Made by a program: the position numbers and the translations under genes
In this document: piece after piece, positions 49,371 to 64,000 of the stretch
Position numbering within the stretch: the stretch's first letter is position 1
Layout: each line of letters begins with the position of its first letter
Notes under the pieces: model-generated
The model's database searches: none
The model's input: only the letters and a program-made list of their open reading frames with translations
Told to the model about the DNA's origin: nothing
Virus record (IMG/VR): IMGVR_UViG_3300013005_000001
Coordinates: 62,001 to 126,000 of that record
DNA: 64,000 bases
Direction: 5' to 3' (one strand)

Positions 49371-49465
49371 TTTATTTGCTCCTTGAGTTGTAAAGTGTTC
49401 GTGCTTTGTCGCCGGCGTATAGTCCGATGACAAAACACATTGTGGTGAATGCTACTGCAAGATGC

Positions 49466-49672: not shown

Positions 49673-50245
49673 GGTATTCTCCTCCTTATAAAGAGATTTA
49701 GTGGTTAGGGATAAAAATAATAACAAGACACACCAGTGTGGATAGCCGGTCTAACTTAAGGGAAAGAACCGACTATCCACAACCTGGGAGGTGTCATGCA
49801 GAGATAGAGAGCAGTTATTTGCAGTGTCGTACTCAGGACACTCTATGTAAGTCTGACAGAAGACTCAGTTTCGACTGTCAGCTAGGGACATAATCAATCC
49901 CTAAGACCTATCGCCAAGAACCAGTCTCGATGATTTCGAGAATGATTCCACGTGGCTCAATGAACAAGTCACCGGCCGGAGAAATCCAGCGAATGATATC
50001 TAAGTTAGAAACAATGCTATCTGCTTCTGCGAGACGGGTAACAGTGTCATTGATAAGTCGCTCAAGTTTGGTAATGGACATGGTATTCCTCCTTGGAATG
50101 TTTTGGGCTTACACCCTTCTTTTTTGATAGAATTCTCTTTTGTATGCACTAATTGAAGGACTAGTGAGAAAAAAGGGGAAAGTCCCAACAGACCCGCACT
50201 TGTGGTACGGATCTGCTGGGACAAGGAACAAGGGACAAGAGGCGG

Positions 50246-50665
50246 TTAGGCCAAGACGTCATCTCCGTCGTCGTCACCGAGAAGAGCACGAAGCTCATCA
50301 GAGATAGACATTGTTGACTTGATGATTGTCAACTCGGACATTCCGTCAGCCCAACACGAGGCTTGCATCTCTTCGATCTTTTCGCCATCGTTGTTGATGT
50401 ACGAGTTGAGCTTTGGTTCTGTGATGATGATGTCGTCACAGGACAAGGCCAACTTAGATCCGTTCCGCTTAGCCAAGTTGAACGCCTTGGTGACCGCTTC
50501 GAGTTGATTTTCGAAGATTGTCATCGTGAGCTTGTTCACGTTGGACGCGTTCTTCTCGTCGAGGATGTTCTTTGACAAGCCGACCAAGACGGTGTAGAAC
50601 TGAGTTCCGTCCTTCTTGGTGTTGACTTTGGGTTGAGTGTTGATGAAGATAAGCTTCTTGGACAT
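50246..50665 (-). CDS. paralog family A protein (possible OB-fold/SSB-like), copy 1
   Basis: INTQP..KKDGT.FYTVLVGL...MTIF...ASCWADG, acidic tail. Confidence 0.7.
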   Translation of the reverse strand: MSKKLIFINTQPKVNTKKDGTQFYTVLVGLSKNILDEKNASNVNKLTMTIFENQLEAVTKAFNLAKRNGSKLALSCDDIIITEPKLNSYINNDGEKIEEMQASCWADGMSELTIIKSTMSISDELRALLGDDDGDDVLA

Positions 50666-50817
50666 GATTGAGACCTCCTAATGGTCGTTATGGATGAGGT
50701 AATCACCCTTCTTTTTAGACAGAAAGTCCTAGTTTAGAAGGGTATCTTGGGCATGTTATAGATTAAACACGCACTAAAGAGGCTTTAGAAGCAATATAAT
50801 ATTTGCTCCTATCATCT

Positions 50818-53196
50818 CTAGATTGAGTTAAGTGCTCGGATAAGCCAATCAATTGGTTGATTAGGGCTCTTTGCACTGAACGTGTACAACCACTGGTCGT
50901 GATTGGCCTTTGGATACTGACGCTTGGCAATATACGAGTGATAAGCCAGTGACAGTATCTTACGGTTCATGTAGTCGACACCCTTGTCTGGGTTGTTGTC
51001 GATACGAGTGAACAGATCGCACAAGTAATCTACCCATGCTTCTGCGGTCATGATGCTACGCTTGACAGTGAGCTTTTGGTGTTCTTGAGCTGCCTTAAGC
51101 AATTCTTCTTCTGTCCATTCGATATTGAACAGCACCTCTGGCTCAACAAGAGTTGTATTGAGATGGTCTGACATTTGAGAAACAGTGGTCCGCACCAGCA
51201 TTTCTCGCATTATGTGCATCTGACACCAAGGTGACTCTTCAACTGTAGTAGTCTCAAGGTCCTTAGCATGTGCTTCTGGCATACGAGTTACCATCCAGAA
51301 CATATCCATCTTGGTACCGTTAAGCCCATTTGTTTCACGGATTTGGCGATACAGTTCACCAACCCATTGTGCAATGAGCTTTACGTCAGCAACAGTAGCG
51401 AGTCCCTGTTCGATGCCATCAATGATCTCTTCGTTGCGAGCGACAGGATTCTTGATGTATTCGTTGATCAGAGCATGCCAAAGAATCTTAGGCAATACTG
51501 CAGAACCAACTCCACCAGGGAATGCAAGTGCTACAAGTCGGCTACGTCCTTCATCACCCAGAGAATACTCAGGATTGATCTTTAGAGTAGAACTACCAGG
51601 AAGGGTTCCGGGAACAACCAAATTGTTCTCTTCCAAGTACGAAGATTGAGGAACAGCCATAAACAGCTCCTCATAATCGATGACAGGTGGAAATGCAGTA
51701 TACCGATGGAATACTGGACCATAGTTCTCGATTGGAATCATAGACCATTCACCAAAGTCATTTGGGTTACGGAGGATGAACGCCATGAGCTTGATGTCTC
51801 CATCAGCAAAACGCACTAGTCGAACATGGATCTTCCATGTATCGTCTAAGTCATCTCCACCATGGTTGATGTGATTCTTCTCGAAGTACTTACCAGGTAC
51901 CGCAAAGCAATGTGTCTTCTTGTGGTAGTAGCCACAGTCATTATACACATTCTTGAAACCAAAGATCTCAAGAGCTTCTTGTGTCATCACGTGAGTTGCA
52001 TAGGCCCATTCAACTGGAAACCAATGATACTGCTTATGACGCCATACATTACCAATGCCTTCGCCTTCTTCGTAAGCACCAAGGAATGACCTCTTTAAGC
52101 CATTGACCGTTAACCAGCGAAGAGTCTGAGTTGCATCAAATGGTATTCCAGCCTGATCAAGATCACGAACAGCCTTCTGCACAATCTCAAGCGTAGACAC
52201 AGGTCGACGGAATTCATCTTCCTCGTTATCTTGATACTGGGCAACTGCATTATTATTATCCACCAGGGTAGTCATGAACTTGAATTGCTTACCTTCTGCA
52301 AGGTCAACTTTTGCTTGTTCAAGGGCACCTACTAGACCACGAATGACATCTTCTTGAGTATACAGACCATTTACCTTCTGGTAGATGGCCATAGTAAGGT
52401 CATCACTCTTGACAGGAATAGCCGAATACGACGGTTCGATTGTAGCAAACTGCCAACCCTTAGTGCTGATCTCAGGCTTGATGTTGGGACCAAAGGTCTT
52501 GATATCGTACCCATCCATCATCTTATCTGGGAGGATTAGAGCATTGCCCTTGATCAACCCATCTTTCATGAGGACTCGGATCTGAACTACTGATGTTTGA
52601 CCATCAAGGATTAGTGCAATCTGTTTGTTGATCCATTCACGTGATGCACGATGGTTACTTACAACACAGCGTATAGCAAAGCTTTGGCTGATTGCGGAGA
52701 TTCCATCTACATCACTATCGATGTACCCAAGATCTAGGTGGTCGATAGTTTGAACCTTGATGTTGCCATCCGGATCATATGTCCACATGCATGACATGCG
52801 AACAATTTCTGCCAATCGCTTGCTCATCTTCTTTGAGTTCTTGATCACAAGACCAACCTCATCGAGTCCAGCAAGCCACGTTGTCGTACGTCCACGATGG
52901 GGCTTCACACCTTTAATCCGTACTGTGTACTGATCTGATGAGTTGCTCCAACGCAGGATTTCTGAATTGGCTAAAACTGGCAGTGCTGTAGGATCCTGTG
53001 AAGGAACCCCAGTGTGCCAGCTCTTGTTTATCTTTCGCACTTCGATCCGGTAATGATCCGGAAAGAATTGCTCCAGAAAGGCGGGCCAATAAGGACCACC
53101 ATCAAACTCCTCAAGAACTTTATCGTTCTCAAGGAGAGGGAGTGCAGTGATAAGCCGGAACCAGCCATCATTGCGTTTGACAATACCATGAAACAT
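50818..53196 (-). CDS. putative single-subunit two-barrel RNA polymerase (RdRP/YonO-like), paralog 2
   Basis: SKRL, DGISAIS, QIRVLMKDGLIKG, NIKPE, SDDLT, GGDDLDD, LRNPN. Confidence 0.62.
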   Translation of the reverse strand: MFHGIVKRNDGWFRLITALPLLENDKVLEEFDGGPYWPAFLEQFFPDHYRIEVRKINKSWHTGVPSQDPTALPVLANSEILRWSNSSDQYTVRIKGVKPHRGRTTTWLAGLDEVGLVIKNSKKMSKRLAEIVRMSCMWTYDPDGNIKVQTIDHLDLGYIDSDVDGISAISQSFAIRCVVSNHRASREWINKQIALILDGQTSVVQIRVLMKDGLIKGNALILPDKMMDGYDIKTFGPNIKPEISTKGWQFATIEPSYSAIPVKSDDLTMAIYQKVNGLYTQEDVIRGLVGALEQAKVDLAEGKQFKFMTTLVDNNNAVAQYQDNEEDEFRRPVSTLEIVQKAVRDLDQAGIPFDATQTLRWLTVNGLKRSFLGAYEEGEGIGNVWRHKQYHWFPVEWAYATHVMTQEALEIFGFKNVYNDCGYYHKKTHCFAVPGKYFEKNHINHGGDDLDDTWKIHVRLVRFADGDIKLMAFILRNPNDFGEWSMIPIENYGPVFHRYTAFPPVIDYEELFMAVPQSSYLEENNLVVPGTLPGSSTLKINPEYSLGDEGRSRLVALAFPGGVGSAVLPKILWHALINEYIKNPVARNEEIIDGIEQGLATVADVKLIAQWVGELYRQIRETNGLNGTKMDMFWMVTRMPEAHAKDLETTTVEESPWCQMHIMREMLVRTTVSQMSDHLNTTLVEPEVLFNIEWTEEELLKAAQEHQKLTVKRSIMTAEAWVDYLCDLFTRIDNNPDKGVDYMNRKILSLAYHSYIAKRQYPKANHDQWLYTFSAKSPNQPIDWLIRALNSI

Positions 53197-53364
53197 GATA
53201 TCCTCGCTTTCTGTTGAATTGGAGGCTTCAACATAGCCTTTTGTTTTAGTGGATAGGTTCTAGGTTTATGGCCTGTAGTCTATCCATAAAGAGAAAACCC
53301 CTTTCGGGGTCTCCTCCTTCTTCTAACAGAATGCTGTTAGGTATAGTCCCGTTGGATCCAACGA

Positions 53365-53808
53365 CTAGAGGATGTCTCCATCTTCTTCGCCGTTGAACTC
53401 TTCGAGGAGCTTCCGCAGTTCCTCTGAGATGCCCATCGATGATCCGATGACGTCCAGAGTTCCTCCGTTAGCCCAGCATGAAGCCTTGAAGCCTGTAACG
53501 GCGACACCATCTTTGGTGACGAAGTTATTTGGCTTGATGTCGGTCAATGTGAACTCGTCACACTTTACGACCAGCTTCAACCCAGCTGCCTTTGCTGCTG
53601 CAAAAGACGCTGCCACGGTTGCAACCTTTTCAGGGAAGATTGTCATCTCCACTTTGAGGTTGGCCAACATGTCCGCAGAGACTCCCTTTGCAGAGAGTAC
53701 ATCCTTGGCAATCCCAATCAAGACGGTCCAGAACATAGTTCCGTCCTTCTTTGAGTAGGCACGTGGTGCTGTGTTGACGTACAAGTACGCCTGCTTTTCT
53801 ACTGACAT
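53365..53808 (-). CDS. paralog family A protein, copy 2
   Basis: VNTAP...KKDGTMFWTVLIG...EEDGDIL. Confidence 0.75.
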   Translation of the reverse strand: MSVEKQAYLYVNTAPRAYSKKDGTMFWTVLIGIAKDVLSAKGVSADMLANLKVEMTIFPEKVATVAASFAAAKAAGLKLVVKCDEFTLTDIKPNNFVTKDGVAVTGFKASCWANGGTLDVIGSSMGISEELRKLLEEFNGEEDGDIL

Positions 53809-54058
53809 GACAACCTCCAAGTTGTATGTAGAGGTGAATATTATTGTTTTAACACGATGTACTCACATCACCGTGCCCACACTTTAGTTATCACATCTCT
53901 CAATATGATCTGGTAGTAAGCACCAGGTTCCTCCTGTAGTTTCGGCTCAGGCCCCTAGGGTATGATCTAGGATCTACCCATAAAAGAAAAACCCCCCGAA
54001 GGGAGTTCTTCTTCTCTTCCAACAGAACGCTGCTGGGCATGGTCAGGTCGAATACCGA

Positions 54059-54325
54059 CTAGTGGCGGATAAGCACCACGTATGTCATCATCTTTGTGTT
54101 AACCCACTTGCCGTCGGTCCACGCAGAGGTGTATTTAACCCTGGTTGGTCGCTTTTCAGCAATGTTTCTGTTGTTCACAAGGAACAATTCTGCATCTGCT
54201 TGCTGGCTGAACCAGTAGATGGTGTATCCCTCATAGGACCTTGCGGTTGCGAAACCACCAGTGCCTGTCAGGAAAATGTCAGAGTTAAGGAACTCCGACC
54301 CATCATTTTTACTGAATTGGGGCAT
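54059..54325 (-). CDS. hypothetical protein
   Basis: AGGAGGAG RBS. Confidence 0.6.
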   Translation of the reverse strand: MPQFSKNDGSEFLNSDIFLTGTGGFATARSYEGYTIYWFSQQADAELFLVNNRNIAEKRPTRVKYTSAWTDGKWVNTKMMTYVVLIRH

Positions 54326-54566
54326 GACTCCTCCTAAAGTGTCATGTTGCATATGCACACCACGTGCATACGACTAACTATTTACTCGTTGACCTGGAGC
54401 TGCTAAGCCACAGGACCAGCATTAAATACTGGGTGGATATAGATCTAGGACCTACCCATAAAAAAAAGATTTAAGCCCTAGGTATAGGGTCACGTCCCAA
54501 TGTTTTAGAGATAGTTGTACTAGTGGTAGTTTTATTATTTAATAATATGATCCATGTCATGACGCA

Positions 54567-54812
54567 TCACTCCTCGATCTGATCGAAGAGACTTGGCTGG
54601 TGGAACCATGGGCAGACAGGAGTTGGCTGACCTTTTCTGTCATGCATATAGATGAACTGATGACACGCCCGGCACAAAACCATCTTATAAGGATGCCTTG
54701 ATGTGAACGTGTCATACTGGTAATCATCCAGTCCATGGGTACGACATTCATCGCATTGTTTGTAACCGCTGTATTCCCAACGACGGTTGCTTTTCTTTTT
54801 GTTGTATGACAT
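54567..54812 (-). CDS. small zinc-finger protein
   Basis: CDEC...CRAC; AAGGAG RBS. Confidence 0.55.
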   Translation of the reverse strand: MSYNKKKSNRRWEYSGYKQCDECRTHGLDDYQYDTFTSRHPYKMVLCRACHQFIYMHDRKGQPTPVCPWFHQPSLFDQIEE

Positions 54813-54850
54813 TTCTGTCTCCTTTTTGTTGTTGTTGTTTTTCATGTTAA

Positions 54851-56707
54851 TTACGCCCACCCTGCAATTTCTACGCTGAGTTTATCTTTCAAGAACTTAA
54901 TGATTGGCTTGCGTGTTTCCTCGGCAAGAGGCTGATTGTGCTTACCAAGAAGCTGAGTCATTGTGCCTTGAACCTCACCATTAAGTATTTGTAATGGCGT
55001 AGAACTCCTTCTTACTTCTGCGTGCCCAATCCAATTGCCTTCAACATCTTTGAAACCAATGATGATTGTCTGACCGTCGTAAACACGATCTGCGTAAGAG
55101 CCAATGCAATTGTTTTGAGTAGCTCCCCATTCAACAAGGTCATGCGTCATCTTAGGAACAATCATTTGAATCCCTTCTGCAATCCACTTTCCATCAAATT
55201 CTGCAAATGCTCTTAGGTAAGGAGTGTTTCGCAGCTTCTTGTTTTCTGTCTTGATCTTGTTGTACTCTGCAGTAACAAAGTCATGGATTTGTTCAACATT
55301 CATCCTTGATCGTGCTACGTGCTGCTTAATTGCAGTTCTGTGGTTACGGCCCTTGATTTGTGTAAACATGTGTGCTGCATCAACAGCGTGCTGCCCATTT
55401 AAATACAAATGACCAGGATCTTTGTCAGATGTAAACATTTGCAAGAGATATTCATCCTTATAACCAAAGTCCCGAAAGAATGCCTTAAAACGTTTTCTCA
55501 TTAAAGGACTTGAGTTATAGCGCATGTAGTGACACACTACGTCAAGATCTAACTTCTCTAGCACTTGAGGATTGAACCCACGGGCAATGATCAACAGGTT
55601 AATAGCTCCACGAAGATGATGGAGCGTATTGATCTTGTTTATGTCACCAAAGATCTTCTTAGTTACTCCGTGCGGATGCATGAAAGCCTTATTCAAGATT
55701 TTCTTAGTTGATGTCTCTCCACCAATCCAATAGATGTCAGATTGAGTAATTCCATTTGGGTACAGCCCTGCACACGTACCACCATACTCAGTTGGCATGT
55801 ACTTGAGGATTTTCAATACATCCTCTTCCTTAATCAACTGATCACGCAAACCAAGCACTGTCAGTTCGATTGTGTCATCCAGTGGAACCAATTTCTTTCT
55901 TGCCATCTGGCCGTAAATAAGACCCCAGATCGGTGTGCCTGTCTTTTTGTTCTTCCACATGAGACGGTACCCATTGTTGGTTTTGTTCATGAATAGAACT
56001 CCAGGCCACTTCTTTTGGTAGTGCTGACCCCTGGTGTTAATAGTTGCTGTTTTGAATTCAACAATCCAACCAGCTTTTTCACCAGGCATTTCCGAAACGT
56101 ACATCTCATTGATAGAGACGTAATCAAACAACTTGTGTTCCTCATATTCATCTCCATATGTTTGTTCAAATTTCAAGGCTCGTTTGGTGCGTTCCCCTTT
56201 GTTAACAACTCGAGTTGAGTATGCGCACAATGGAGAGAAGTTGTCTTCGCCGGAACCCAACAGTCCCAACTTTTCTACCTTCTCATTGAACTTTTTAATG
56301 GCATTTCTTGCATCCAAGTAGTTGTCATTAATAAGAGCCAATGACTCTATTACTTCAATCTTGGATTGGAACTCTTGCATTGAACTACCAGCTCGTGGGA
56401 AGGAACGATCATTGCCCACCATGGTCATAACACTTAAATGATGATCAATCTCAGCTCTACTCATTACTTGTTGGATCTGAGTGATATCAAGTATGGCTTT
56501 TGCCAAGTCCATTGAATTCATTTCTGCTGGATCCATGTTTGCAAACCAGATGTTATATTGCTCTAGCGTGCCTTTCTTTGTTTGAATTGTGAGCTTCATG
56601 GGCTCTACCTCTTTCTGTATAGGGAATGGGTTTTTCTCCTGCGGAAGCAGGATTGGTGGTTGTGGATAGTGGGTGGATGGGACATCAGTTTGCTCGAAAC
56701 TGCTCAT
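54851..56707 (-). CDS. PcfJ-like domain protein
   Basis: C-terminal VPK...DLVEWG..QNNCIGSY...V..G...I...Q..G.HN; alternative start at 56599. Confidence 0.8.
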   Translation of the reverse strand: MSSFEQTDVPSTHYPQPPILLPQEKNPFPIQKEVEPMKLTIQTKKGTLEQYNIWFANMDPAEMNSMDLAKAILDITQIQQVMSRAEIDHHLSVMTMVGNDRSFPRAGSSMQEFQSKIEVIESLALINDNYLDARNAIKKFNEKVEKLGLLGSGEDNFSPLCAYSTRVVNKGERTKRALKFEQTYGDEYEEHKLFDYVSINEMYVSEMPGEKAGWIVEFKTATINTRGQHYQKKWPGVLFMNKTNNGYRLMWKNKKTGTPIWGLIYGQMARKKLVPLDDTIELTVLGLRDQLIKEEDVLKILKYMPTEYGGTCAGLYPNGITQSDIYWIGGETSTKKILNKAFMHPHGVTKKIFGDINKINTLHHLRGAINLLIIARGFNPQVLEKLDLDVVCHYMRYNSSPLMRKRFKAFFRDFGYKDEYLLQMFTSDKDPGHLYLNGQHAVDAAHMFTQIKGRNHRTAIKQHVARSRMNVEQIHDFVTAEYNKIKTENKKLRNTPYLRAFAEFDGKWIAEGIQMIVPKMTHDLVEWGATQNNCIGSYADRVYDGQTIIIGFKDVEGNWIGHAEVRRSSTPLQILNGEVQGTMTQLLGKHNQPLAEETRKPIIKFLKDKLSVEIAGWA

Positions 56708-56829
56708 GGTTACCTCCATGTTGGGACCTGGCGAAGGTCTTGGTTCTAGCCATAAAAGAAAAACCCCCCGAAGGGAGTTCTTCTTCTCTTCCAACAGAAC
56801 GCTGCTGGGATGGTCAGGTTAAATACCGA

Positions 56830-57276
56830 CTAGAGGATGTCACCATCTTCTTCGTCATTGTACTCATCAAGAAGCTTCCGGAGCTCCTCTGAAACGCCCA
56901 TGGATGAACCAAGAACGTCAAGAGTCTTTTCTCCATTAGCCCAGCACGAAGCTGCAAAGCCATTAACCGCAACACCATTGTTATTGGTGTAGTTGTTTGG
57001 CTTTACTTCTGTAAGAGTGAAATCTTCACACTTCAGAACCAGCTTCAACCCAGCTGCTTTTGCCTTAGCAAATGCATTAGCCATCAATTCGAGCTTGTCG
57101 GGAAAGACTGTCATCTTTACCTTGAGCGTCTTGGCTTGTGCCTCGGAAACTCCCTTTGCAGAGAGCAAGTCCGGGGTAAGCCCAATGAGGACAGTCCAGA
57201 AAACTGTTCCATCCCCCTTGTTGTTAGGCGCTGGTGCTGTGTTGACGTACAGGTACGTCTTTTTTGTTTCTGACAT
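56830..57276 (-). CDS. paralog family A protein, copy 3
   Basis: Clearly similar to copy 2, same upstream TTGGAGGTTGTC RBS. Confidence 0.75.
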   Translation of the reverse strand: MSETKKTYLYVNTAPAPNNKGDGTVFWTVLIGLTPDLLSAKGVSEAQAKTLKVKMTVFPDKLELMANAFAKAKAAGLKLVLKCEDFTLTEVKPNNYTNNNGVAVNGFAASCWANGEKTLDVLGSSMGVSEELRKLLDEYNDEEDGDIL

Positions 57277-57493
57277 GACAACCTCCAAGTTGTATGTAAG
57301 ATGCGGATGTACAGAATGCACATACGACTACTATTTACTCGTTACAGGAGCTGTTAAGCCACTGTTGACCACACCAAAAGGTGCTGAGGTTGTAATCTAG
57401 TTACTACCCATAAAAGAAAAACCACACTGGATGTGTGGCTCTTCTTGACCGTTATAAATGCATAGGTGGTCAACCTTGGTCATGAGTTAAAAC

Positions 57494-57706
57494 TCAATTG
57501 TTTTGCAAGTCTGCAATCTGCTCACGGGTGAATGTGTCAAACACCCACCGGATTGCCTTGCGGGAACATTTTTCATAGCTCCACTTGTGCTTGGGGTCAC
57601 TTTGGATTTTGTCTGCAATCTTGATGATTGCCAAGCCGAGCTCAAGCCCGTATTGACGACAAATCCTTTCTTGTACTTGAGTTTCCTCAAATTGGGACTG
57701 GGACAT
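57494..57706 (-). CDS. hypothetical protein
   Basis: AAGGAG RBS in cassette. Confidence 0.6.
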   Translation of the reverse strand: MSQSQFEETQVQERICRQYGLELGLAIIKIADKIQSDPKHKWSYEKCSRKAIRWVFDTFTREQIADLQNN

Positions 57707-57819
57707 GGATTTCTCCTTTTGTTGGGCCCAAGCTTCATGCCTGGGGACTACCCATAAAAAAAAGATTTTGATATTATAGATATAGTTATAGGATTAAAGG
57801 CTAGTGTCACCCACATCAC

Positions 57820-58251
57820 CTACTGCCAAACCTTTGCATCGATTACATTCAACCCAAGGCTTTTCATCATCTCCAGGTTAGGATCTTCGTCATCCATAGC
57901 CCATTGCAGGTCATATTTCTTCAAAAGCATCTTGATCATGTGCTCTTTGTATTTCCTGCTACTAATTCCATTCCACTTATTAGGCCTGTGCCAGATCGAA
58001 TCAACCAAATGGTCAATCTCTAATTCCCGCAACTTCTTCCAAGTATTTGCCTTGCAACTTTGCCCTCTTGCAGTTAAGAACACAAGTTCATAACCCATCA
58101 ATTTAAAGGCTTTAAGCATAGCTATACCTCCATCTAGACCATTTGCATTTAGCGTTTCTTGAACCCACTGGTCATCACGCTCTGGTGACCAGTTTGGTGT
58201 GACACTCACAAGAGTGCCGTCGATGTCCACAAGGACAGCTTTTGGTTTCAT
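57820..58251 (-). CDS. HAD-family phosphatase (polynucleotide 3'-phosphatase-like)
   Basis: DIDGTL, LTARG, K, MDDED motifs. Confidence 0.8.
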   Translation of the reverse strand: MKPKAVLVDIDGTLVSVTPNWSPERDDQWVQETLNANGLDGGIAMLKAFKLMGYELVFLTARGQSCKANTWKKLRELEIDHLVDSIWHRPNKWNGISSRKYKEHMIKMLLKKYDLQWAMDDEDPNLEMMKSLGLNVIDAKVWQ

Positions 58252-58375
58252 GATTTTCTCCAATCACTAGGGTCTAGACTTGGTGCCTAGAAACTACCCA
58301 TAAAAGAAAAACTCCCCTAAGGGAGTCCTTCTTCTCTTCTAACAGAACGCTGTTAGGTATTGTCAATCAGTTGGA

Positions 58376-58702
58376 TTAGCTGTTAGGGCACTTACCCTCT
58401 ATGAGGAAGCGTTTGCTCCTCATGCATCCGTATTCCTCAACACGAGCCACTACCTTGTTGTAGTGAATCTTGTCTCCCGGCACACGTATGTATGCCTTGT
58501 TCATCAGTGCTCCAATGAGACGACCAACACCCCATGCGATGTCGCTCGCTTCATCTTTGAACTCTGCCATGCTCTTTGCTTCAAAAAGTTCGTAGATTTC
58601 TCCACGACGCTTTCCTTCCACAAGATCACGACTGAACAAGTCAGCAATGCCCTCCTTGAACGTGTGCACTTTCATGCATCCGCACCAATTTGTTGTTTCC
58701 AT
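58376..58702 (-). CDS. hypothetical protein, weak MazG-like acidic motif
   Basis: E..E...DEASD. Confidence 0.5.
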   Translation of the reverse strand: METTNWCGCMKVHTFKEGIADLFSRDLVEGKRRGEIYELFEAKSMAEFKDEASDIAWGVGRLIGALMNKAYIRVPGDKIHYNKVVARVEEYGCMRSKRFLIEGKCPNS

Positions 58703-58790
58703 TGTTACCTTTCTAAGCAGGGATCTCAACCCTACTCATAAAAAGAAAACGGCCCTATCTCCCGACAGTACCGTTCCCTTTTCCAACCAC

Positions 58791-59141
58791 TTAGTAGTCG
58801 CGCTGGTTGAAGACGCAATCTCCAGTAAATGGCCTATCACCGGTATTGTATTTACCATCTCGATGTTCAGTCATTACTAAAGGTTTTGTACCTTCAGACA
58901 GAATTTCCTTAATGTACTTTTCTAGCTGTTGGTACTGCTTCTCGTAGGATTGCTCATTACCAACCTGACTGTGACACTCAATGTTCTCAAGCATGTTGAC
59001 AATGGTCTTTTCAACATCTGCATAAACATCGGTGATGTCATAGCCCCAGAAAGCCCAGTAATTGACGTATGCACGCCCCTCACTGGTGTGACCCAGTATG
59101 ATGTTGATCATCGTAATGATGATTTCCTTTGGAATGAACAT
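58791..59141 (-). CDS. hypothetical protein
   Basis: GGAGG RBS in cassette. Confidence 0.6.
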   Translation of the reverse strand: MFIPKEIIITMINIILGHTSEGRAYVNYWAFWGYDITDVYADVEKTIVNMLENIECHSQVGNEQSYEKQYQQLEKYIKEILSEGTKPLVMTEHRDGKYNTGDRPFTGDCVFNQRDY

Positions 59142-59277
59142 GTTTTACCTCCATGTTCTAATGCCCACACCACGTTGGTGTAGGACTTGGTAGCTTTCAG
59201 ACTACCCATAAAGGAAAAACCACCCTGGATGGGTGGTATCCTTCAGGTTTACTTGATTCAACCTTGTTGCTACAGTT

Positions 59278-59769
59278 TTACTTGTGAGCTTTGTGTGCCT
59301 TTGCTGGGTAACTACCCCAGTTTGCGTTGCGGACGTGATCCCAGGTGCAGTGACGAGAACTGCAGACGCTGCACTTTGGATGCGTTGCGCCGTTTCTCAC
59401 TTTCTTCACTTGGACTCTTTTTGCGTCCGCCTTTTCCATTTCTTCCTGAAGAAGATACATCTCATCGAGCTTGGTGTTTGCTTCGATGTACTCTTTGCGG
59501 GCAGTGCCCAGAGAGATGTAGTAGTCCAGTTTGTCTGAGCAGAACCAGCAGTAGCCCTCGTTGTGACCACTTGTGTCCCACTCAGTGCTTCCGCACGCTT
59601 TGCACGGTGAGCATTCCTGAACTTCTTCTTCCTTGACACTCTTCAGTTCGTTGATGGTTTCCTTGATGGATTCCTTGACGAAGTGCTTGATTGCCCTTTG
59701 CTGGAAGTTGATCACCAGATTGGAGACGAAGATCGCCACCAGACTGAGAATCAAGAAAAGATCTGCCAT
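59278..59769 (-). CDS. membrane-anchored protein with CxxC zinc fingers
   Basis: N-terminal TM, CKAC, CWFC, CSVC. Confidence 0.6.
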   Translation of the reverse strand: MADLFLILSLVAIFVSNLVINFQQRAIKHFVKESIKETINELKSVKEEEVQECSPCKACGSTEWDTSGHNEGYCWFCSDKLDYYISLGTARKEYIEANTKLDEMYLLQEEMEKADAKRVQVKKVRNGATHPKCSVCSSRHCTWDHVRNANWGSYPAKAHKAHK

Positions 59770-59924
59770 AACAGATTCCTCCTTTTTTTGTGCCCACACC
59801 CCAATGGTGTAGGACTTGGCAGCTTTCAAACTACCCATAAAAGAAAAACTACACTGGATGTGTAGCATTCTTTTGAACCGTTATAATAATATGTATAGGT
59901 GGTTAACCTTGGTCATACTTCTCG

Positions 59925-60245
59925 TTAAGGAAAGAAAGAGTCTCCTATTTCTTCACATGGATCACACCACATACCGTAACGATCTACGGGTGTAGTGTGA
60001 CACTTGTGGCATTTTGCAATGCAGCCGACATGTGCAGAAAGAAACTGATTCCTCTCCTCTTCTGAAACCAGGACGTAGTAACTGTCGTCGTTTTCCCATT
60101 CCAACCTTTCAGTTGGGAAATGGTAACCACAGTTACATACCCATGTCACCGGTGCAAGCCTGCCATCAATGTCATACTCACTTTCCGGATAGTATCCAAA
60201 GCGAAGAGCCCAGATACCTTCTGGTAACTTGAAGTTCAAAGGCAT
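59925..60245 (-). CDS. Cys-rich zinc-finger protein
   Basis: CNC, CHKC, CDPC; AAGGAGG RBS. Confidence 0.6.
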   Translation of the reverse strand: MPLNFKLPEGIWALRFGYYPESEYDIDGRLAPVTWVCNCGYHFPTERLEWENDDSYYVLVSEEERNQFLSAHVGCIAKCHKCHTTPVDRYGMWCDPCEEIGDSFFP

Positions 60246-60351
60246 TTCTGCCTCCTTTCAGTTTTGCCCACATCGGAGTGATGCAGGACTTGGCAATCGT
60301 CAGACTACCCATAAAAGAAAAACCACACTGGCTGTGTGGCATTCTTTTGCA

Positions 60352-60624
60352 TCAAACTTCAACAATTTCCAATATGGATTGTGAATCCAACATGGTCAAG
60401 AGTCCGTCTGCTGCGTCGATGTATACAACTGTTCCAGCCAGAACTTGATGACACTCTGTGCCAAAATGTTCTTGATAGAATTCCATTGCTACATCGTTGG
60501 ATGGAATGATGAATTCGTCAATCACTTCTTCCTGATCGAAATCAGACCAGATATGAACGTAACGAATGTACACCCTTTTTCCTGCTTCCATTTTGCCTCC
60601 TTTCTCATTCGGTAATATGGACAT
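60352..60624 (-). CDS. hypothetical protein
   Basis: AGGAGG RBS. Confidence 0.55.
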   Translation of the reverse strand: MSILPNEKGGKMEAGKRVYIRYVHIWSDFDQEEVIDEFIIPSNDVAMEFYQEHFGTECHQVLAGTVVYIDAADGLLTMLDSQSILEIVEV

Positions 60625-60703
60625 GGACCTTCCTCCTTGAGTAATCGTCAGACTACCCATAAAAGAGAAACCTCAGGAACTAACCCTGAGGCTCTCTATC
60701 ATG

Positions 60704-60994
60704 TCACTTACTTATTGGAATCTGGATTGTTTGTCCAGGCCGCAAAGATGTGCCATTATGCACAACCAGGTAATCGGTTAGTGGTTGATATCCACTGCAA
60801 TTACCTGACTGCACTTGTTCTGATGCAATCCCTGTGATGGTGTCTCCCGACTTTACCACAACCTGGATTGCTTGTTTACAAAGGAACTTCTCTTGTAAAG
60901 AGTTCCCCAAAAATGAAATGACGTTAATCATTCCAATGATTGCAAGAACCAAGACAACAAGTGCCATGATTCTCCTGTACCAGTAGATGCTCAT
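60704..60994 (-). CDS. membrane-anchored LysM-domain protein
   Basis: TM helix then VVVKSGDTITGIA...N...LRPGQTIQIP. Confidence 0.8.
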   Translation of the reverse strand: MSIYWYRRIMALVVLVLAIIGMINVISFLGNSLQEKFLCKQAIQVVVKSGDTITGIASEQVQSGNCSGYQPLTDYLVVHNGTSLRPGQTIQIPISK

Positions 60995-61141
60995 CACATC
61001 TCCTTTCAGTTTTGCCCACACGGTTATGCAGGACTTGGTGGTCGTCAGACTACCCATAAAAGAAAAACACCATACTGGATGTATAGTGTTTCTCTATTAG
61101 TGATTGTTCTGTTGCCAGGCGTCACTACTGCCCCGTACTAA

Positions 61142-61318
61142 TTACAGATCCTGCCTGGTATTCAAATACTCTTTAAGCTGTTTAAGCTTCAAGTGCATTT
61201 CTTCCTTGCATTCATCTATATTTAGGTGATGGTTCTCATCGTGCATATACATGACTGACTGTTGCCATTCACATGTTGCACCATAAGCATCACTTAACAA
61301 GTCTGCTAGATTGTTCAT
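61142..61318 (-). CDS. 58 aa protein, tandem copy 1
   Basis: AGGAGG RBS; MNNLADLLSDAYGATCEWQ... Confidence 0.7.
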   Translation of the reverse strand: MNNLADLLSDAYGATCEWQQSVMYMHDENHHLNIDECKEEMHLKLKQLKEYLNTRQDL

Positions 61319-61450
61319 CTTGCTTCCTCCTTTCTGAATAGATGGCCTACCAAGCCTAGAATCTACCCATAAAAGAAAAACTACACTGGATGTGTAGTTC
61401 TTCTTCGTGATTGTTCTGTTGCCAGGCGTCACTACTGCCCCGTAGTCTAA

Positions 61451-61627
61451 TTACAGATCCTGCATGTTATCCAAATACTCTTTCAGGTTTTTAAGCCTCA
61501 AGCGCATTTCTTTATCACACTGGTCTATATTTAGGCGATGGTTCTCATCATGCATCCACATAACTGAATGTTGCCATTCACATGTTGCATTAAGAGCATC
61601 GCTTAACAAGGATGCTAGATTTTTCAT
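61451..61627 (-). CDS. 58 aa protein, tandem copy 2 (absent from the ORF track)
   Basis: MKNLASLLSDALNATCEWQHSVMWMHDENHRLNIDQCDKEMRLRLKNLKEYLDNMQDL. Confidence 0.7.
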   Translation of the reverse strand: MKNLASLLSDALNATCEWQHSVMWMHDENHRLNIDQCDKEMRLRLKNLKEYLDNMQDL

Positions 61628-61752
61628 CTTGCTTCCTCCTTTCTAGATAGATGGCCTACCAAGCCTAGAATCTATCCACAAAAAGAAAACCCCTTTCGGA
61701 GTCTTCTTAATCACCAATTATAATAATATTTATAGGATGGTGAATCCTTGGT

Positions 61753-62172
61753 CTAACCCTTCGTGAAGCCCTCGCTTGCGTTGAAGACATTGATTTCCAT
61801 CTTCGTGATGTGTTCTTCGTTATACATAACGACGATGTCATCACGCTGGATTTCTTTCTTCAGCCAAGCTTGCAGACATTCAGTCACAACATGATGACTG
61901 ATTTCTTTTGTTGGGCTCAGAAGACAAAACGGGTTGGTCTTTTCCCATTCGGAGTCATACTTGCTGACTACGGTAAACATCCAATTGAAGCCCTTTTCAA
62001 GGCCAATCAGCTCGACATCAACCCAGTTGGCAATGGGAACTACCTTTCCGTTGATGTATCGGCCCGGAGACACAATTTCATCAAGAGTCAGGTCGTAGCT
62101 TGCCCACAGAAGCAGTGCTCCAATAGGAAGATTCATGAGAGCTTCGACAAGCTCCCAATCCTTCTCGTCCAT
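61753..62172 (-). CDS. hypothetical protein
   Basis: AAGGA RBS in cassette. Confidence 0.6.
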   Translation of the reverse strand: MDEKDWELVEALMNLPIGALLLWASYDLTLDEIVSPGRYINGKVVPIANWVDVELIGLEKGFNWMFTVVSKYDSEWEKTNPFCLLSPTKEISHHVVTECLQAWLKKEIQRDDIVVMYNEEHITKMEINVFNASEGFTKG

Positions 62173-62542
62173 GGTTTCCTTTCGGGTGGCCCCAACCAAG
62201 GGACTCTTAGTCTACCCATAAAAGAAAAACCCAGGAACTGACCCTGGGTTATCTTTATTGTCTAGTTTTCGAGTAGCTTCGCCAATACATCTAGCACTAA
62301 ATCCCATTCTCCCCATTCTTGGTCTGCAACGGTCTTACGGTTAATTGCATCGGCTAACTTAGTTTTCGCTGATTCGATATCGGCTAGAACTTCTTTTGGC
62401 AATGACATGGATTTCTCCTCTGTTAGATTAGGCTTTCATACCTAATGACTATTCATAAAAGAAAAACCCCAGGGGATTGCCCTGAGGTTCTTCTTGACAG
62501 AGTATTTATTACACACCCCTGACTGGTGTGGGCACAAGTGGC

Positions 62543-62833
62543 CTACCGACTCAAGTCCGAAGGGCAGTCTCCAGAATGGCTAACCACTCTGTAGAGCTGC
62601 TCTCCGGTTGGTCCGAACTCCCTCTGAGGGTGGAAATTGCTCGGCTTCCGAAGAAGCTCAAGCAATCCTACCTTCTTATGGCAGAACAGACAACACTTCT
62701 CTGGTGAAAAGAGTCGAATTGTCATCAAATAACTCAAGGTTATCTGATTAAATTCGCTCTTCACCAAAGAAGACCGAAGTCGGTTGTGGAGAATGATCAT
62801 AAACCAGTAGACTCGAAAGTCTTCTGGTACCAT
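62543..62833 (-). CDS. hypothetical protein
   Basis: RBS before MVPEDF. Confidence 0.5.
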   Translation of the reverse strand: MVPEDFRVYWFMIILHNRLRSSLVKSEFNQITLSYLMTIRLFSPEKCCLFCHKKVGLLELLRKPSNFHPQREFGPTGEQLYRVVSHSGDCPSDLSR

Positions 62834-62970
62834 GATGATACCCCCTTTCTCCATGGTTTCACCCATGGGTAAAGGCGCACACCGGGTTGGTGCACGACTT
62901 GGCAACCTTGCGGCTACCCATAAAAGAAAAACCCAGGAACTGACCCTGGGTTATCTTTACGAGTTTTACA

Positions 62971-63291
62971 TCAAGCATCGTAGAAAAGCTTAATAAAGCC
63001 TTCTTCGATATCCTTTGTAGGAAGAACTTTAATTGAATAAAGATCATCTGCAAAGAGACTGATGTATCCACCTTCTTGGGCAACGGCCTGCAAATCATGC
63101 ACCCCCATAGGGACACAGACATACATGTCGTTTGGCAACGATACCAATGGATGCTTCTGGTTGTCCAGATAGCACCCGTCTAGCACTCGGCTGTGCGCCT
63201 GTGTGCATGACATGTGTACCTCCATAAGGGTGTCGCCCTCAAAGAAGAACACGTGGTACGTATTCCTAGAGTAAATGGTTACCTCTTCCAT
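62971..63291 (-). CDS. hypothetical protein
   Basis: AAGGAG RBS in cassette. Confidence 0.6.
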   Translation of the reverse strand: MEEVTIYSRNTYHVFFFEGDTLMEVHMSCTQAHSRVLDGCYLDNQKHPLVSLPNDMYVCVPMGVHDLQAVAQEGGYISLFADDLYSIKVLPTKDIEEGFIKLFYDA

Positions 63292-63502
63292 AATTGCTCC
63301 TTTCAGTTAGCAAGTAGGGGTTGCGTACACCGGTTGGTGCACGACTAAGTAGCTGTTGGACTACCTATAAAAGAAAAACGGACGCATACGAGACGCCCGC
63401 TTTCCTTACCTGTGATCATTCGGCTTCTTTTTTCTCACTTACTAGATCTTCTGTTGCCAGGCCAAAGATATGGCCCCGAATCAAATTCAATTAGCGATCA
63501 AC

Positions 63503-63688
63503 TCAGATGTGCTTCTTGATGGTCCTTGCTCCGAAGAACGAGGCAACCACAAGAACGCCCAACCAGTTAACCAAGCCAAGAACGATTGCAACAACCGTCC
63601 AAGCCCAGCTCACTGCAGGAGTCACCAAGAGAACAACCACAAGGATTGCAAACCTGTGCTCCCGGAGGAACGCTTTGATTTTGTTCAT
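63503..63688 (-). CDS. small membrane protein
   Basis: AAGGAGGT RBS, two TM helices. Confidence 0.6.
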   Translation of the reverse strand: MNKIKAFLREHRFAILVVVLLVTPAVSWAWTVVAIVLGLVNWLGVLVVASFFGARTIKKHI

Positions 63689-64000
63689 TTCACCTCCTTT
63701 CACAAAGATGAACGAGCGCATGCCGGAGTGGCACACGACTTAGCAACCTCTCGGCTACTCATAAAAGAAAAACACCACACTGGCTGTGTGGTGCCTCTTT
63801 ATCAGTGATTGTGATTAACAGAGCGTCACTACTGCTCCGGCTTAATACATGCAACTAACCGTTATATGAACGATCGCAGCTAGGGCAACGTGTTTCTCCA
63901 TTATCTGGGAACTCGTGTCCACACCACCTGCACTTAAGCTTGAGTAAAAGGCGCATCTAACCTCCTTTCTTTGGGCTCAGGCTTCCATACCTGATAACTA

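What the first reader, a model, noticed from the sequence alone, without database searches (positions are those of the whole stretch)
53280..63771. Array of about 20 single-gene cassettes separated by a fused terminator/promoter module
Seen: nearly every small ORF is preceded on the minus strand by a GC hairpin (variable sequence, conserved pairing) whose U tract runs into TTTTCTTTTATGGGTAG. Flanking UTR blocks are shared between unrelated genes (53991/56761/58311; 57421/59850; 62220/62920). No sigma70-type -35/-10 pair is evident. Known: the PeSL cassettes of T4-type phages promote modular shuffling, and N4 uses hairpin promoters. Inference: a phage-RNAP promoter array that also acts as recombination substrate for a shuffling early or anti-host gene library.
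Basis: partly seen in the sequence, partly recalled or inferred. Interest (0 to 1): 0.85.

Follow-up and report, generated by a model that had tools for sequence, protein, structure and literature searches.

The report
Phage terminator-promoter gene cassette array
An uncultured 210-kb freshwater phage carries about 21 small genes, each behind the same stop-and-restart transcription signal, next to its own RNA polymerase gene, and close relatives have gained and lost these genes exactly at that signal.

Summary
Twenty copies of TTTWTRRRTAG lie on the minus strand between 53280 and 63771 (1.6 expected). A 21st copy straddles the window end. Nineteen of 21 follow a GC hairpin plus T run. Sigma-70-like pairs are not enriched.

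The modules are intrinsic terminators fused to a non-sigma-70 promoter-like motif, then a 5' stem-loop, a Shine-Dalgarno site and one ORF. The last module drives a 792-aa protein (RNAP-A). Its predicted fold matches two-barrel RNA polymerases such as QDE-1. An 846-aa paralogue (RNAP-B, 36479-39019) matches the phage P23-45-type gp64 polymerase.

A second motif, AAAAAGAAGGG, starts right after RNAP-A. It also precedes RNAP-B and is conserved across the whole phage clade.

Relatives with 94-95% identical RNAP-A carry about 4 or 8 cassettes instead of 21. Nine of 15 homology-block ends fall within 25 nt of the motif. One crossover lies inside it.

So this works like the PeSL cassettes of T4-type phages, but with a phage-specific promoter in an uncharacterised jumbo-phage clade.

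The start sites, the polymerase that reads the motif, and the functions of the mostly orphan cassette genes are all untested.

The parts
63998..64000 (-). Last 3 bases (TAG) of module 1, whose hairpin and motif lie just beyond the window end (window-equivalent about 64040-63998). It serves the 33-aa zinc-ribbon ORF 63855-63956.
   Evidence: L034 4753 corresponds to window 64008
63755..63795 (-). Module 2: hairpin, T run, TTTATGAGTAG. Gene 63503-63688 (61 aa, hydrophobic).
63361..63401 (-). Module 3: hairpin, T run, TTTATAGGTAG. Gene 62971-63291 (106 aa).
62914..62954 (-). Module 4: hairpin, T run, TTTATGGGTAG. It is 100% identical over 46 nt to module 6. Gene 62543-62833 (96 aa).
62449..62489 (-). 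Module 5: hairpin, T run, TTTATGAATAG. Gene 62262-62408 (48 aa).
62212..62252 (-). Module 6: hairpin, T run, TTTATGGGTAG. Gene 61753-62172 (139 aa).
61672..61712 (-). Module 7: hairpin, T run, variant TTTGTGGATAG. Gene 61451-61627 (58 aa), a tandem paralogue of the next gene.
   Evidence: D4: 244 nt, 86%
61363..61403 (-). Module 8: hairpin, T run, TTTATGGGTAG. Gene 61142-61318 (58 aa).
61050..61090 (-). Module 9: hairpin, T run, TTTATGGGTAG. Gene 60704-60994 (96 aa, LysM hit).
60653..60693 (-). Module 10: hairpin, T run, TTTATGGGTAG. Gene 60352-60591 (79 aa).
60305..60345 (-). Module 11: hairpin, T run, TTTATGGGTAG. Gene 59925-60245 (106 aa, Cys-rich).
59831..59871 (-). Module 12: hairpin, T run, TTTATGGGTAG. 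Gene 59278-59769 (163 aa).
59202..59242 (-). Module 13: hairpin, T run, TTTATGGGTAG. Gene 58791-59141 (116 aa).
58732..58772 (-). Module 14: hairpin, T run, TTTATGAGTAG. Gene 58376-58702 (108 aa).
58294..58334 (-). Module 15: hairpin, T run, TTTATGGGTAG. Gene 57820-58251 (143 aa, HAD/PNKP-type phosphatase).
57748..57772 (-). Module 16: no hairpin, AAAATCTTTTTTTTATGGGTAG only. Gene 57494-57706 (70 aa).
57404..57444 (-). Module 17: hairpin, T run, TTTATGGGTAG, then a 127-nt leader. Gene 56830-57276 (148 aa, acidic C-terminal tail, paralogue family).
56746..56786 (-). Module 18: hairpin, T run, TTTATGGCTAG. Two genes: 54851-56707 (618 aa, PcfJ-like domain) and 54567-54812 (81 aa).
54452..54476 (-). 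Module 19: no adjacent GC hairpin, AAATCTTTTTTTTATGGGTAG, then a 126-nt leader related to that of module 17. Gene 54059-54325 (88 aa).
53974..54014 (-). Module 20: hairpin, T run, TTTATGGGTAG, then a 165-nt leader. Gene 53365-53808 (147 aa, paralogue of the module 17 gene).
53280..53320 (-). Module 21: hairpin, T run, TTTATGGATAG. It drives the RNAP-A gene.
50818..53196 (-). RNAP-A, 792 aa: predicted single-subunit two-barrel RNA polymerase and last gene served by the array motif.
   Evidence: AF2 pLDDT 89.4, pTM 0.87. Foldseek against QDE-1: E 7.5e-7 to 7e-6, probability 1.00; against phage gp64 polymerase 8f72: E 0.024. Invariant HGGxDLDD and RNPNDFGEW.
36479..39019 (-). RNAP-B, 846 aa: paralogue of RNAP-A and second predicted two-barrel RNA polymerase, preceded by the class II motif at 39046-39057.
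   Evidence: hhalign probability 99.8%, E 7.5e-28, 581 columns. AF2 pLDDT 85.2. Foldseek against the P23-45-type polymerases 8f72 and 8f5m: E 3e-5 to 1.6e-4, probability 1.00.
50705..50716 (-). Class II motif AAAAAGAAGGGT, the first of six on the minus strand. The others are at 50113-50124, 48879-48890, 48496-48507, 41965-41976 and 39046-39057.

Best explanation
The region is the early-type variable region of an uncultured ~210-kb phage. It is built from about 21 autonomous expression cassettes. Each module is read 5' to 3' on the minus strand.

1. A GC-rich hairpin plus T run ends the upstream transcript. This is an intrinsic terminator, often bidirectional because an A/G-rich tract precedes the hairpin.
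2. The T run is also the upstream half of a conserved non-sigma-70 promoter, TTTTTYTTTTATGGGTAG.
3. Transcription probably starts at the G run, so GGGUAG forms the 5' arm of a terminal stem-loop.
4. A strong Shine-Dalgarno site and one ORF follow.

The promoter is most likely read by a phage-encoded two-barrel RNA polymerase, not by the host sigma-70 holoenzyme. The last cassette encodes one such polymerase (RNAP-A). A paralogue (RNAP-B) lies 11.8 kb downstream behind a second motif class, AAAAAGAAGGG. That arrangement implies a two-polymerase, two-promoter cascade.

Because every cassette is flanked by the same 17-100 nt of sequence, recombination between modules deletes, duplicates, inserts and swaps cassettes. 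Each cassette stays expressible afterwards.

Shown: the anatomy, the enrichment, the polymerase folds, the two motif classes, and breakpoints at the modules.

Inferred: promoter activity, start site, termination, which polymerase reads which motif, early timing, and the recombination pathway.
For: - Motif enrichment, a single strand and a single locus.
- Terminator-like sites 32 against 9.5 expected, and no excess of sigma-70 pairs.
- The position matrix over 119 distinct modules shows a G-rich 3' arm, TTTTTYT, TTTATGGGTAG and N5-AGRYY.
- Seven to eight modules lack the hairpin yet keep the T run and motif, so the two elements are separable.
- If the RNA starts at GGG, 89% of 113 modules pair at least 2 of the first 3 nt, against 67% in shuffles. 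The bases after TAG show compensatory changes.
- RNAP-A and RNAP-B are two-barrel polymerases by fold and are paralogues.
- The RNAP-A gene carries the array motif in the four closest relative loci (L036-L039), and a lineage-specific variant of it lies 150-200 nt upstream in L040 and L042.
- The class II motif begins right after RNAP-A in every lineage examined and precedes RNAP-B in 9 of 12 loci listed plus L059.
- The array motif changes with lineage: TTTTTTGAGGCTAG where RNAP-A is 44% identical, TTTTAnnGATAG at 46%, and an unrelated ~35-nt motif at 36%. This is expected for a phage-polymerase promoter.
- Cassette number is 21 here against about 8, 4 and 11 in relatives.
- Nine of 15 homology-block ends lie within 25 nt of a core. 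9.5% of positions qualify, and 0 of 20,000 randomisations reach 9.
- One crossover maps inside TTTTATGG(C/G)TAG.
- Adjacent cassettes include a tandem duplicate (244 nt, 86%).
- Cassette genes are patchily distributed across lineages.
Against: - No transcript 5' or 3' ends are available, so promoter and terminator activity are not demonstrated.
- The start site is ambiguous. The conserved AG 6-7 nt after TAG would also fit a start further downstream.
- The 5' pairing excess is modest (0.89 against 0.67).
- The polymerases carry DxDD rather than the canonical DxDxD.
- Foldseek TM-scores to known polymerases are only 0.3-0.4.
- The usual cascade logic would have RNAP-B, if it is a virion enzyme, read the array motif and RNAP-A read class II. 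That fits poorly with the observed divergence. RNAP-A (36% in the L041 lineage) diverges together with the array motif. RNAP-B (63% in the same genome) and class II stay conserved. That pattern suggests each polymerase reads the motif in front of its own gene, which leaves the first round of expression unexplained. It could instead reflect physical linkage only.
- The host and its promoter consensus are unknown.
- Only the window and flanks of the 210-kb genome were visible.
Confidence: 0.66

Rival explanations
1. The motif is a promoter for the host RNA polymerase. The polymerase would use a host sigma factor with an unusual consensus, or a phage-encoded sigma-like specificity factor. RNAP-A and RNAP-B would then serve only the later gene classes.
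For: - Early genes must be read by something present at infection, and no virion polymerase has been shown.
- The hairpin plus T run is the signal that bacterial polymerases terminate at.
- The host is unknown. A WhiB gene in the related locus L041 hints at Actinobacteria, whose -10 boxes are loose.
Against: - There is no -35/-10 pair at any fixed spacing, and the tool's sigma-70 scan is at background.
- The position after TAG that would be the -7 T is T in only 36% of modules.
- The hairpin occupies the -35 region at variable distance.
- The motif is 17 or more nt long and nearly invariant, and it changes between phage lineages. That is typical of phage-polymerase promoters.
- No sigma-like Pfam hit appeared among the ORFs scanned.
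Confidence: 0.13
2. The array is transcribed as one or a few long RNAs from the leader region. The modules would be RNA processing sites. An AU-rich single-stranded stretch between two stem-loops would be cut by RNase E or a phage endoribonuclease, leaving monocistronic mRNAs protected by 3' and 5' hairpins.
For: - A sigma-70-like TTGAAG-N16-TATAAA, found by reading the sequence, lies upstream of the motif-less leader gene.
- The U-rich stretch lies between two predicted stem-loops in most modules.
- GGGUAG is predicted to be part of an RNA structure.
Against: - Canonical GC hairpin plus T5-8 signals at 19 of 21 junctions would stop most polymerases.
- RNase E has loose specificity and would not explain an invariant TATGGGTAG.
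- The motif persists where the upstream hairpin is missing.
- Cassettes that move between genomes stay flanked by the whole module, which makes sense if the module supplies expression.
- The RNAP-A gene, 11 kb and 21 terminators from the leader, would be poorly expressed.
Confidence: 0.1
3. The modules are targets of a site-specific recombinase, an integron-like cassette system, rather than transcription signals.
For: - The region is an array of single-gene cassettes bounded by a structured repeat.
- One crossover lies inside the conserved core.
- Cassette content varies between close relatives.
Against: - The hairpins are short GC stems with tetraloops followed by T runs, not 57-141-bp attC-like imperfect palindromes.
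- No integrase or recombinase domain was found among the array ORFs scanned.
- The motif is directional, always co-oriented with the gene, and sits at a fixed position before the Shine-Dalgarno site.
- Flanking identity of 46-101 nt is enough for homologous recombination.
- RecA-like genes sit beside the arrays in the related loci L040-L042.
Confidence: 0.04
4. The hairpins are N4-type promoter hairpins, extruded from supercoiled DNA and recognised by a virion polymerase.
For: A hairpin lies 12-13 nt upstream of the putative start in 19 of 21 modules. The phage encodes its own polymerases.
Against: - There are 100 distinct hairpin sequences among 119 modules, the loops are mostly 4-5 nt, and no bases within the hairpin are conserved.
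- Seven to eight modules keep the motif without any hairpin.
- Each hairpin is followed by a T run, like a terminator.
- The polymerases found are two-barrel enzymes, not T7/N4-type enzymes.
Confidence: 0.03

Closest known systems
PeSL (promoter-early stem-loop) cassettes of T4-type phages (PMC2839356, PMC4122927)
   Same: - The module is a composite of stem-loop terminator, promoter, Shine-Dalgarno site and start codon.
- Modules are dense between small orphan ORFs in a hypervariable region.
- Indels, replacements and duplications between close relatives have crossovers inside the module.
- Each moved ORF brings its own expression signals.
   Different: - The promoter part is not sigma-70-like. 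It has no -35/-10 pair but a 17-nt T-rich TATGGGTAG motif that overlaps the terminator's T run.
- The genome shows no T4 core genes in the window and no nucleotide match to any deposited phage.
- The array is one contiguous block of about 21 modules next to a phage polymerase gene.
- Mini-circles were not tested.
Thermus phage P23-45 two-polymerase system: gp96 virion RNAP and gp64 non-virion RNAP (PMC10770324)
   Same: - There are two phage-encoded two-barrel polymerases.
- Two unrelated promoter motif classes are partitioned along the genome.
- One polymerase gene lies within the earliest gene block.
- RNAP-B's best structural matches are gp64 and gp62.
   Different: - Both enzymes here are stand-alone paralogues of about 800 aa. 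Neither is fused to a tape-measure protein.
- RNAP-A is structurally nearer to QDE-1.
- Here the promoters are fused to hairpin terminators in a cassette array. P23-45's virion enzyme uses a 26-nt termination motif.
- The genome is about 210 kb.
Early promoter sets of jumbo phages with their own multisubunit RNAPs, phiKZ and AR9 (PMC7598289)
   Same: - A highly conserved, AT-rich, roughly 10-nt or longer motif can be found by sequence analysis upstream of early genes.
- A different motif serves later genes.
- The phiKZ late consensus T-3 A T G+1 resembles the TATG of this motif.
   Different: The polymerases here are single-subunit. No beta/beta'-like split subunits or DFDGD motif were seen in the window. 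The fusion to terminators and the cassette shuffling are not features described for those phages.
T7 class III promoters and the phi10 leader
   Same: The promoter ends in TATA followed by a start at GGG. The initially transcribed GGGAGA pairs with downstream sequence to form a 5'-terminal stem-loop.
   Different: No T7-type polymerase (Pfam RNA_pol) was detected among the ORFs scanned. The upstream specificity region here is a T run shared with a terminator.

Membership tests
PeSL cassettes (T4-type phages) | Stem-loop placed just upstream of the promoter, after the preceding ORF's stop codon | tested here: met
   19 of 21 modules; 98 of 119 across relatives
PeSL cassettes (T4-type phages) | Sigma-70-like early promoter: -35, N17, -10 | tested here: not met
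   14 sigma-70-like pairs against 16.7 expected, none at the modules. The position matrix shows no -35/-10.
PeSL cassettes (T4-type phages) | Shine-Dalgarno site and start codon at the 3' end of the module | tested here: met
   GGAGG-type site 5-12 nt before the start in all 21 modules
PeSL cassettes (T4-type phages) | Association with indels and replacements between closely related genomes, with crossovers within the module | tested here: met
PeSL cassettes (T4-type phages) | Host genome is a T4-type myovirus | tested here: not met
   No megablast match to 50,697 phage records. No T4 core family among the 20 non-array window ORFs scanned with PHROGs. Only 64 kb of the 210 kb was seen.
PeSL cassettes (T4-type phages) | Formation of excised mini-circles | not testable with these tools
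   Needs inverse PCR or reads from infected cells or virions
Intrinsic terminator | GC-rich stem-loop immediately followed by a T run, downstream of a stop codon | tested here: met
   32 sites against 9.5 expected; dG -10 to -23 kcal/mol
Intrinsic terminator | Transcript 3' ends at the T run | not testable with these tools
   No RNA data
N4-type hairpin promoter | Conserved hairpin (5-7 bp stem, 3-nt loop, conserved bases) that is required for recognition | tested here: not met
   100 distinct hairpins among 119 modules, loops mainly 4-5 nt, and 7-8 modules without a hairpin keep the motif
Two-barrel single-subunit RNA polymerases (QDE-1, YonO, P23-45 gp64) | Fold with two double-psi beta-barrels similar to known members | tested here: met
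   RNAP-A against QDE-1: E 7.5e-7, probability 1.00. RNAP-B against gp64 and gp62: E 3e-5, probability 1.00. TM-scores are only 0.3-0.4.
Two-barrel single-subunit RNA polymerases (QDE-1, YonO, P23-45 gp64) | Catalytic DxDxD (DbDGD) metal-binding motif | tested here: inconclusive
   Invariant HGGxD-x-DD (D449, D451, D452 in RNAP-A; D432, D434, D435 in RNAP-B). No canonical D-x-D-G-D in any window ORF. Residue-level superposition was not available.
Two-barrel single-subunit RNA polymerases (QDE-1, YonO, P23-45 gp64) | DNA-dependent RNA synthesis from a specific promoter | not testable with these tools
   Needs a biochemical assay
Integron gene cassettes | attC-type imperfect palindrome with core sites and an adjacent IntI integrase; promoterless cassettes | tested here: not met
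   The hairpins are short terminator-like stems. No recombinase domain among the array ORFs. Each cassette has its own promoter-like motif.

The most novel reading that the evidence does not exclude
A whole clade of uncultured ~200-kb freshwater phages runs on two paralogous QDE-1/gp64-like single-subunit RNA polymerases, each with its own promoter class. The early-class promoter has been fused to an intrinsic terminator to give a self-sufficient, portable expression unit. Such units act as an integrase-free 'phage integron': orphan genes are captured, duplicated and exchanged between lineages by recombination in the module. The polymerase and its promoter co-evolve as a linked block.
Probability: 0.35. 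Interest if true: 0.78.

Novelty: new variant of a known kind. Interest (0 to 1): 0.64.

Why it matters
This would extend PeSL-type modular shuffling beyond T4-like phages and beyond host-type promoters. That would suggest terminator-promoter fusions are a general way for large phages to keep a fast-turnover library of accessory genes expressible.

It also flags an abundant, unannotated family of two-barrel RNA polymerases. More than 120 clusters of RNAP-A and 244 of RNAP-B were found. Every member that carries a name is called hypothetical, and most carry none. Candidate promoters are in hand, so these enzymes can be tested directly in vitro without culturing the phage.

The short promoter, terminator and leader module could be useful as an orthogonal expression part if it works as proposed.

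Tried and rejected
- **Nucleotide search.** Megablast of the array and of 30-50 kb against 50,697 phage records found no match. tblastn of RNAP-A against phages also found none.
- **Sequence-based annotation of the two large proteins.** Pfam, PHROGs and PDB sequence searches gave nothing. Only fold comparison identified them.
- **Catalytic motif.** A search for the canonical D-x-D-G-D motif in all window ORFs found nothing.
- **Rfam on 50-64 kb.** It gave only sub-threshold hits, the best being alpha_tmRNA at 24.5 bits against a cut-off of 50. I rejected these.
- **Cassette proteins.** Pfam and PHROGs gave only HAD/PNKP, LysM and PcfJ hits. There is no basis for an anti-host label.
- **Acidic-tail paralogue.** A PDB sequence search found nothing.
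- **Bacterial genomes.** A scan for the 17-mer gave only single chance matches and no arrays, so no host clue.
- **Literature.** A search for the motif string found only unrelated primers.
- **Actinobacterial -10 box.** I considered TAGnnT as a TAnnnT-type box and rejected it, because the sixth base is T in only 36% of modules.
- **Small ORF.** I considered the ATG inside TATGGGTAG as a start codon and rejected it. There is no Shine-Dalgarno site, and the variants ATA, TTA and TTG are not consistent.
- **Polymerase assignment from divergence rates.** This was suggestive but confounded by linkage.
- **Virion association of RNAP-B.** PHROG scans of its neighbours showed nothing structural.

Full report
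**Observation.** On the minus strand between 53280 and 63771 the 17-mer TTTTCTTTTATGGGTAG occurs 18 times at up to 3 mismatches. 0.52 are expected, and none of 100 shuffles reaches 18. The core TTTWTRRRTAG occurs 20 times in the window, 18 of them here, against 1.6 expected. A slightly wider pattern finds 21 modules. It adds the variants at 61682 (TTTGTGGATAG) and 56756 (TTTATGGCTAG) and one module that straddles the window end. That last module is visible in the overlapping locus L034 of the same contig, IMGVR_UViG_3300013005_000001, 210,302 bp.

All copies are co-oriented with the genes. The rest of the window has only two chance-like core matches.

Nineteen of 21 modules have a stable hairpin that runs into the T tract, with dG from -10 to -23 kcal/mol. 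The consensus scan finds 32 terminator-like sites against 9.5 +/- 3.3 in shuffles. It finds 14 sigma-70-like pairs against 16.7 +/- 3.8, so those are not enriched.

- 79 nt at 53967, 56739 and 58287, 87% identical;
- 46 nt at 62212 and 62914, 100% identical;
- a 59-nt leader block in seven copies;
- a 244-nt tandem duplication that covers two 58-aa genes.

The 57421/59850 pair appears in that call only as the hairpin-plus-motif family. Its longer shared 3'UTR block was seen by reading the sequence.

**Anatomy.** I pooled 119 distinct modules from 19 loci of related contigs. The conserved columns are a G-rich 3' hairpin arm, TTTTTYT, TTTATGGGTAG, and then AGRYY five to nine nt after TAG.

The hairpins themselves are not conserved. 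There are 100 different sequences, with loops mostly of 4-5 nt and often TTCG or GAAA. Ninety-eight of 119 have dG <= -8, against a shuffled mean of -5.2.

Seven to eight modules have no hairpin yet keep the T run and motif. The window examples are at 57758 and 54462. Hairpin and motif are therefore separable elements, with the T run belonging to both.

An A/G-rich tract before many hairpins complements the T run. The same hairpins score as terminators on the plus strand too.

Downstream, GGGTAG tends to pair with sequence 10-30 nt further on. If the RNA begins at the first G, 89% of 113 modules pair at least two of the first three bases, against 67% with shuffled downstream sequence. Starting the RNA elsewhere gives 12-48%. 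The bases after TAG change in a compensatory way, for example GGTAGCC/GGTTGCC, GGTAGTC/GATTGCC and GTAGATC/GATCTAT.

A strong GGAGG-type Shine-Dalgarno site and one ORF follow. The PcfJ cassette has two ORFs.

**Gene content.** Most cassette products have no Pfam or PHROG match. The exceptions are a HAD/PNKP-type phosphatase (57820-58251), a weak LysM hit (60704-60994) and a PcfJ-like domain in the 618-aa protein.

Two cassettes (56830-57276 and 53365-53808) and a third gene outside the array (50246-50665) are paralogues with acidic C-terminal tails.

Nothing supports or excludes an anti-host role.

**The polymerases.** The last module (53290, variant TATGGATAG) precedes a 792-aa ORF with no Pfam, PHROG or PDB sequence match. 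It has more than 120 homologue clusters, all either unnamed or called hypothetical.

An AlphaFold model built on 34 sequences has pLDDT 89.4 and pTM 0.87. Its only significant PDB matches are the two-barrel polymerase QDE-1 (E 7.5e-7 to 7e-6, probability 1.00). The P23-45-type phage polymerases gp64 and gp62 come next (E 0.024 to 0.23). BFVD returns only uncharacterised proteins of uncultured Caudovirales.

The 846-aa ORF at 36479-39019 is a paralogue:
- two colinear BLASTP segments, 3e-8 and 7e-6;
- a profile comparison at 99.8% probability, E 7.5e-28, over 581 columns.

Its own model has pLDDT 85.2. Its only significant hits are gp64 and gp62 (E 3e-5 to 1.6e-4, probability 1.00).

Both proteins keep an invariant HGGxDxDD and R(N/S)PN(D/G)(F/Y)GE(W/Y). 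The acidic motif is DxDD rather than the canonical DxDxD. TM-scores are 0.3-0.4. The assignment is therefore good but not proven.

**A second motif class.** Directly after the RNAP-A gene a different repeat appears before genes: AAAAAGAAGGG(T/A). It lies at 50716, 50124, 48890, 48507, 41976 and 39057, the last one 27 nt before the RNAP-B start codon.

It is present at the same place in every related lineage examined, down to 36% RNAP-A identity. It precedes RNAP-B in 9 of 12 loci listed and in L059.

The array motif varies by lineage:
- TCTCTTTATGGGTAG where RNAP-A is 56% identical;
- hairpin plus TTTTTTGAGGCTAGTC at 44%;
- hairpin plus CTTTTAnnGATAG at 46%;
- an unrelated ~35-nt motif without hairpin or T run at 36%.

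In that last genome RNAP-B is still 63% identical. RNAP-A and the array motif therefore diverge together, while RNAP-B and class II stay put.

This lineage-specific behaviour is what phage-polymerase promoters show, and it argues against a host sigma-70 promoter. It does not settle which polymerase reads which motif. Gene order suggests a cross-cascade: a pre-existing enzyme reads the array and makes RNAP-A, and RNAP-A then reads class II and makes RNAP-B. The co-divergence suggests self-recognition instead, or merely physical linkage.

**Recombination.** I compared loci anchored on RNAP-A. Contigs with 94-95% identical RNAP-A have about 8 and about 4 cassettes, and one at 56% has about 11, against 21 here.

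BLASTN blocks between them start and stop at the modules. Nine of 15 ends of blocks of 150 nt or more lie within 25 nt of a core. 9.5% of positions qualify, and none of 20,000 randomisations reaches nine.

At one junction the relative L036 matches the left side of one module of this phage and the right side of another module two cassettes away. The switch lies inside TTTTATGG(C/G)TAG.

Cassette genes are patchily distributed. Several are missing from the nearest relatives but present in more distant ones, and seven have no homologue in any fetched locus. The adjacent 58-aa genes are a tandem duplicate.

This is the pattern described for PeSLs in T4-type phages, which I checked in the papers. 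RecA-like genes sit next to the arrays in three distant relatives. The shared flanks of 46-101 nt are long enough for homologous exchange.

**Comparison and verdict.** The element works like a PeSL. It fails two defining features: a sigma-70-type promoter and a T4-type genome.

The regulatory logic is closest to P23-45, which has two two-barrel polymerases and two motif classes. It also resembles the jumbo phages with their own polymerases. The enzymes here, however, are stand-alone paralogues, and the early promoter is fused to a terminator in a shuffling array.

The N4 hairpin-promoter idea is not supported.

I rate this a new variant of a known kind. The main uncertainties are the lack of any transcript end data, the ambiguous start site, the polymerase-to-motif assignment, and the unknown host. 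A WhiB gene in one relative hints at Actinobacteria.

Noticed in passing
window 50705-50716, 50113-50124, 48879-48890, 48496-48507, 41965-41976, 39046-39057 (minus strand): A second conserved intergenic motif, AAAAAGAAGGG(T/A), lies in front of genes. It starts right after the RNAP-A gene and precedes RNAP-B. It is conserved in every related lineage checked, even where the array motif differs.
   Followed up: partly
window 47400-64000 against 1-47400: There is a composition step. The array, RNAP-A and the class II genes are 42-47% GC, while the rest of the window is 30-40%. The same contrast is seen in the relatives L040 and L042. It is unexplained.
   Followed up: no
window 56830-57276, 53365-53808, 50246-50665 (minus strand): Three paralogues of about 140-148 aa have acidic C-terminal tails (..EEDGDIL, ..DDDGDDVLA). 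This recalls the tails of single-strand DNA-binding proteins. They have no Pfam, PHROG or PDB sequence match.
   Followed up: partly
window 57277-57403 and 54326-54451 (minus strand): Long (126-127 nt) related leaders (..AACGAGTAAATAGTAGTCGTATGTGCA..) precede two unrelated genes. The leader of 53365-53808 (165 nt) shares its last part. This may be a regulatory RNA leader. Rfam gave no hit.
   Followed up: no
window 61097-61137, 61404-61444, about 63815-63850; L040 8744-8779: A 3'UTR block, GGGGCAGTAGTGACGCCTGGCAACAGAACAATCAC, lies between stop codon and terminator. It is identical in a lineage whose RNAP-A is only 46% identical. A sub-threshold Rfam alpha_tmRNA hit lies on it (24.5 bits against 50).
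   Followed up: partly
L034 5375-5940 (window-equivalent about 64630-65195): An AT-rich divergent intergenic region lies at the head of the array, before a motif-less 186-aa leader gene. It contains a sigma-70-like TTGAAG-N16-TATAAA. A similar AT-rich region heads the array in L040 (6200-6440).
   Followed up: no
window 61717-61744, about 59880-59915, about 57450-57490 (minus strand): A shared 3'UTR block, GACCAAGGTT(G/A)ACCACCTAT.., lies upstream of three hairpins. One copy scores as TTCACC-N16-TATAAT (10 of 12). It may be an occasional host-type promoter that fires into the terminator, or it may be chance.
   Followed up: no
window 3363-31452: Six tRNA genes (Gly-TCC, Arg-TCT, Met-CAT, Lys-TTT, Asn-GTT, Leu-TAA) lie on the minus strand.
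   Followed up: no
L041 21659-21922: A WhiB-family gene in a distant relative of the same phage clade hints at an actinobacterial host. The helicase at window 33870-35543 also finds Gordonia and Mycobacterium phages among its best hits, although the two Tunturiibacter (Acidobacteria) phage hits score higher.
   Followed up: no
window 40540-41286 (minus strand): A 248-aa ORF matches a PHROG transposase family (phrog_4285, E 6e-21). It lies 1.5 kb upstream of RNAP-B.
   Followed up: no
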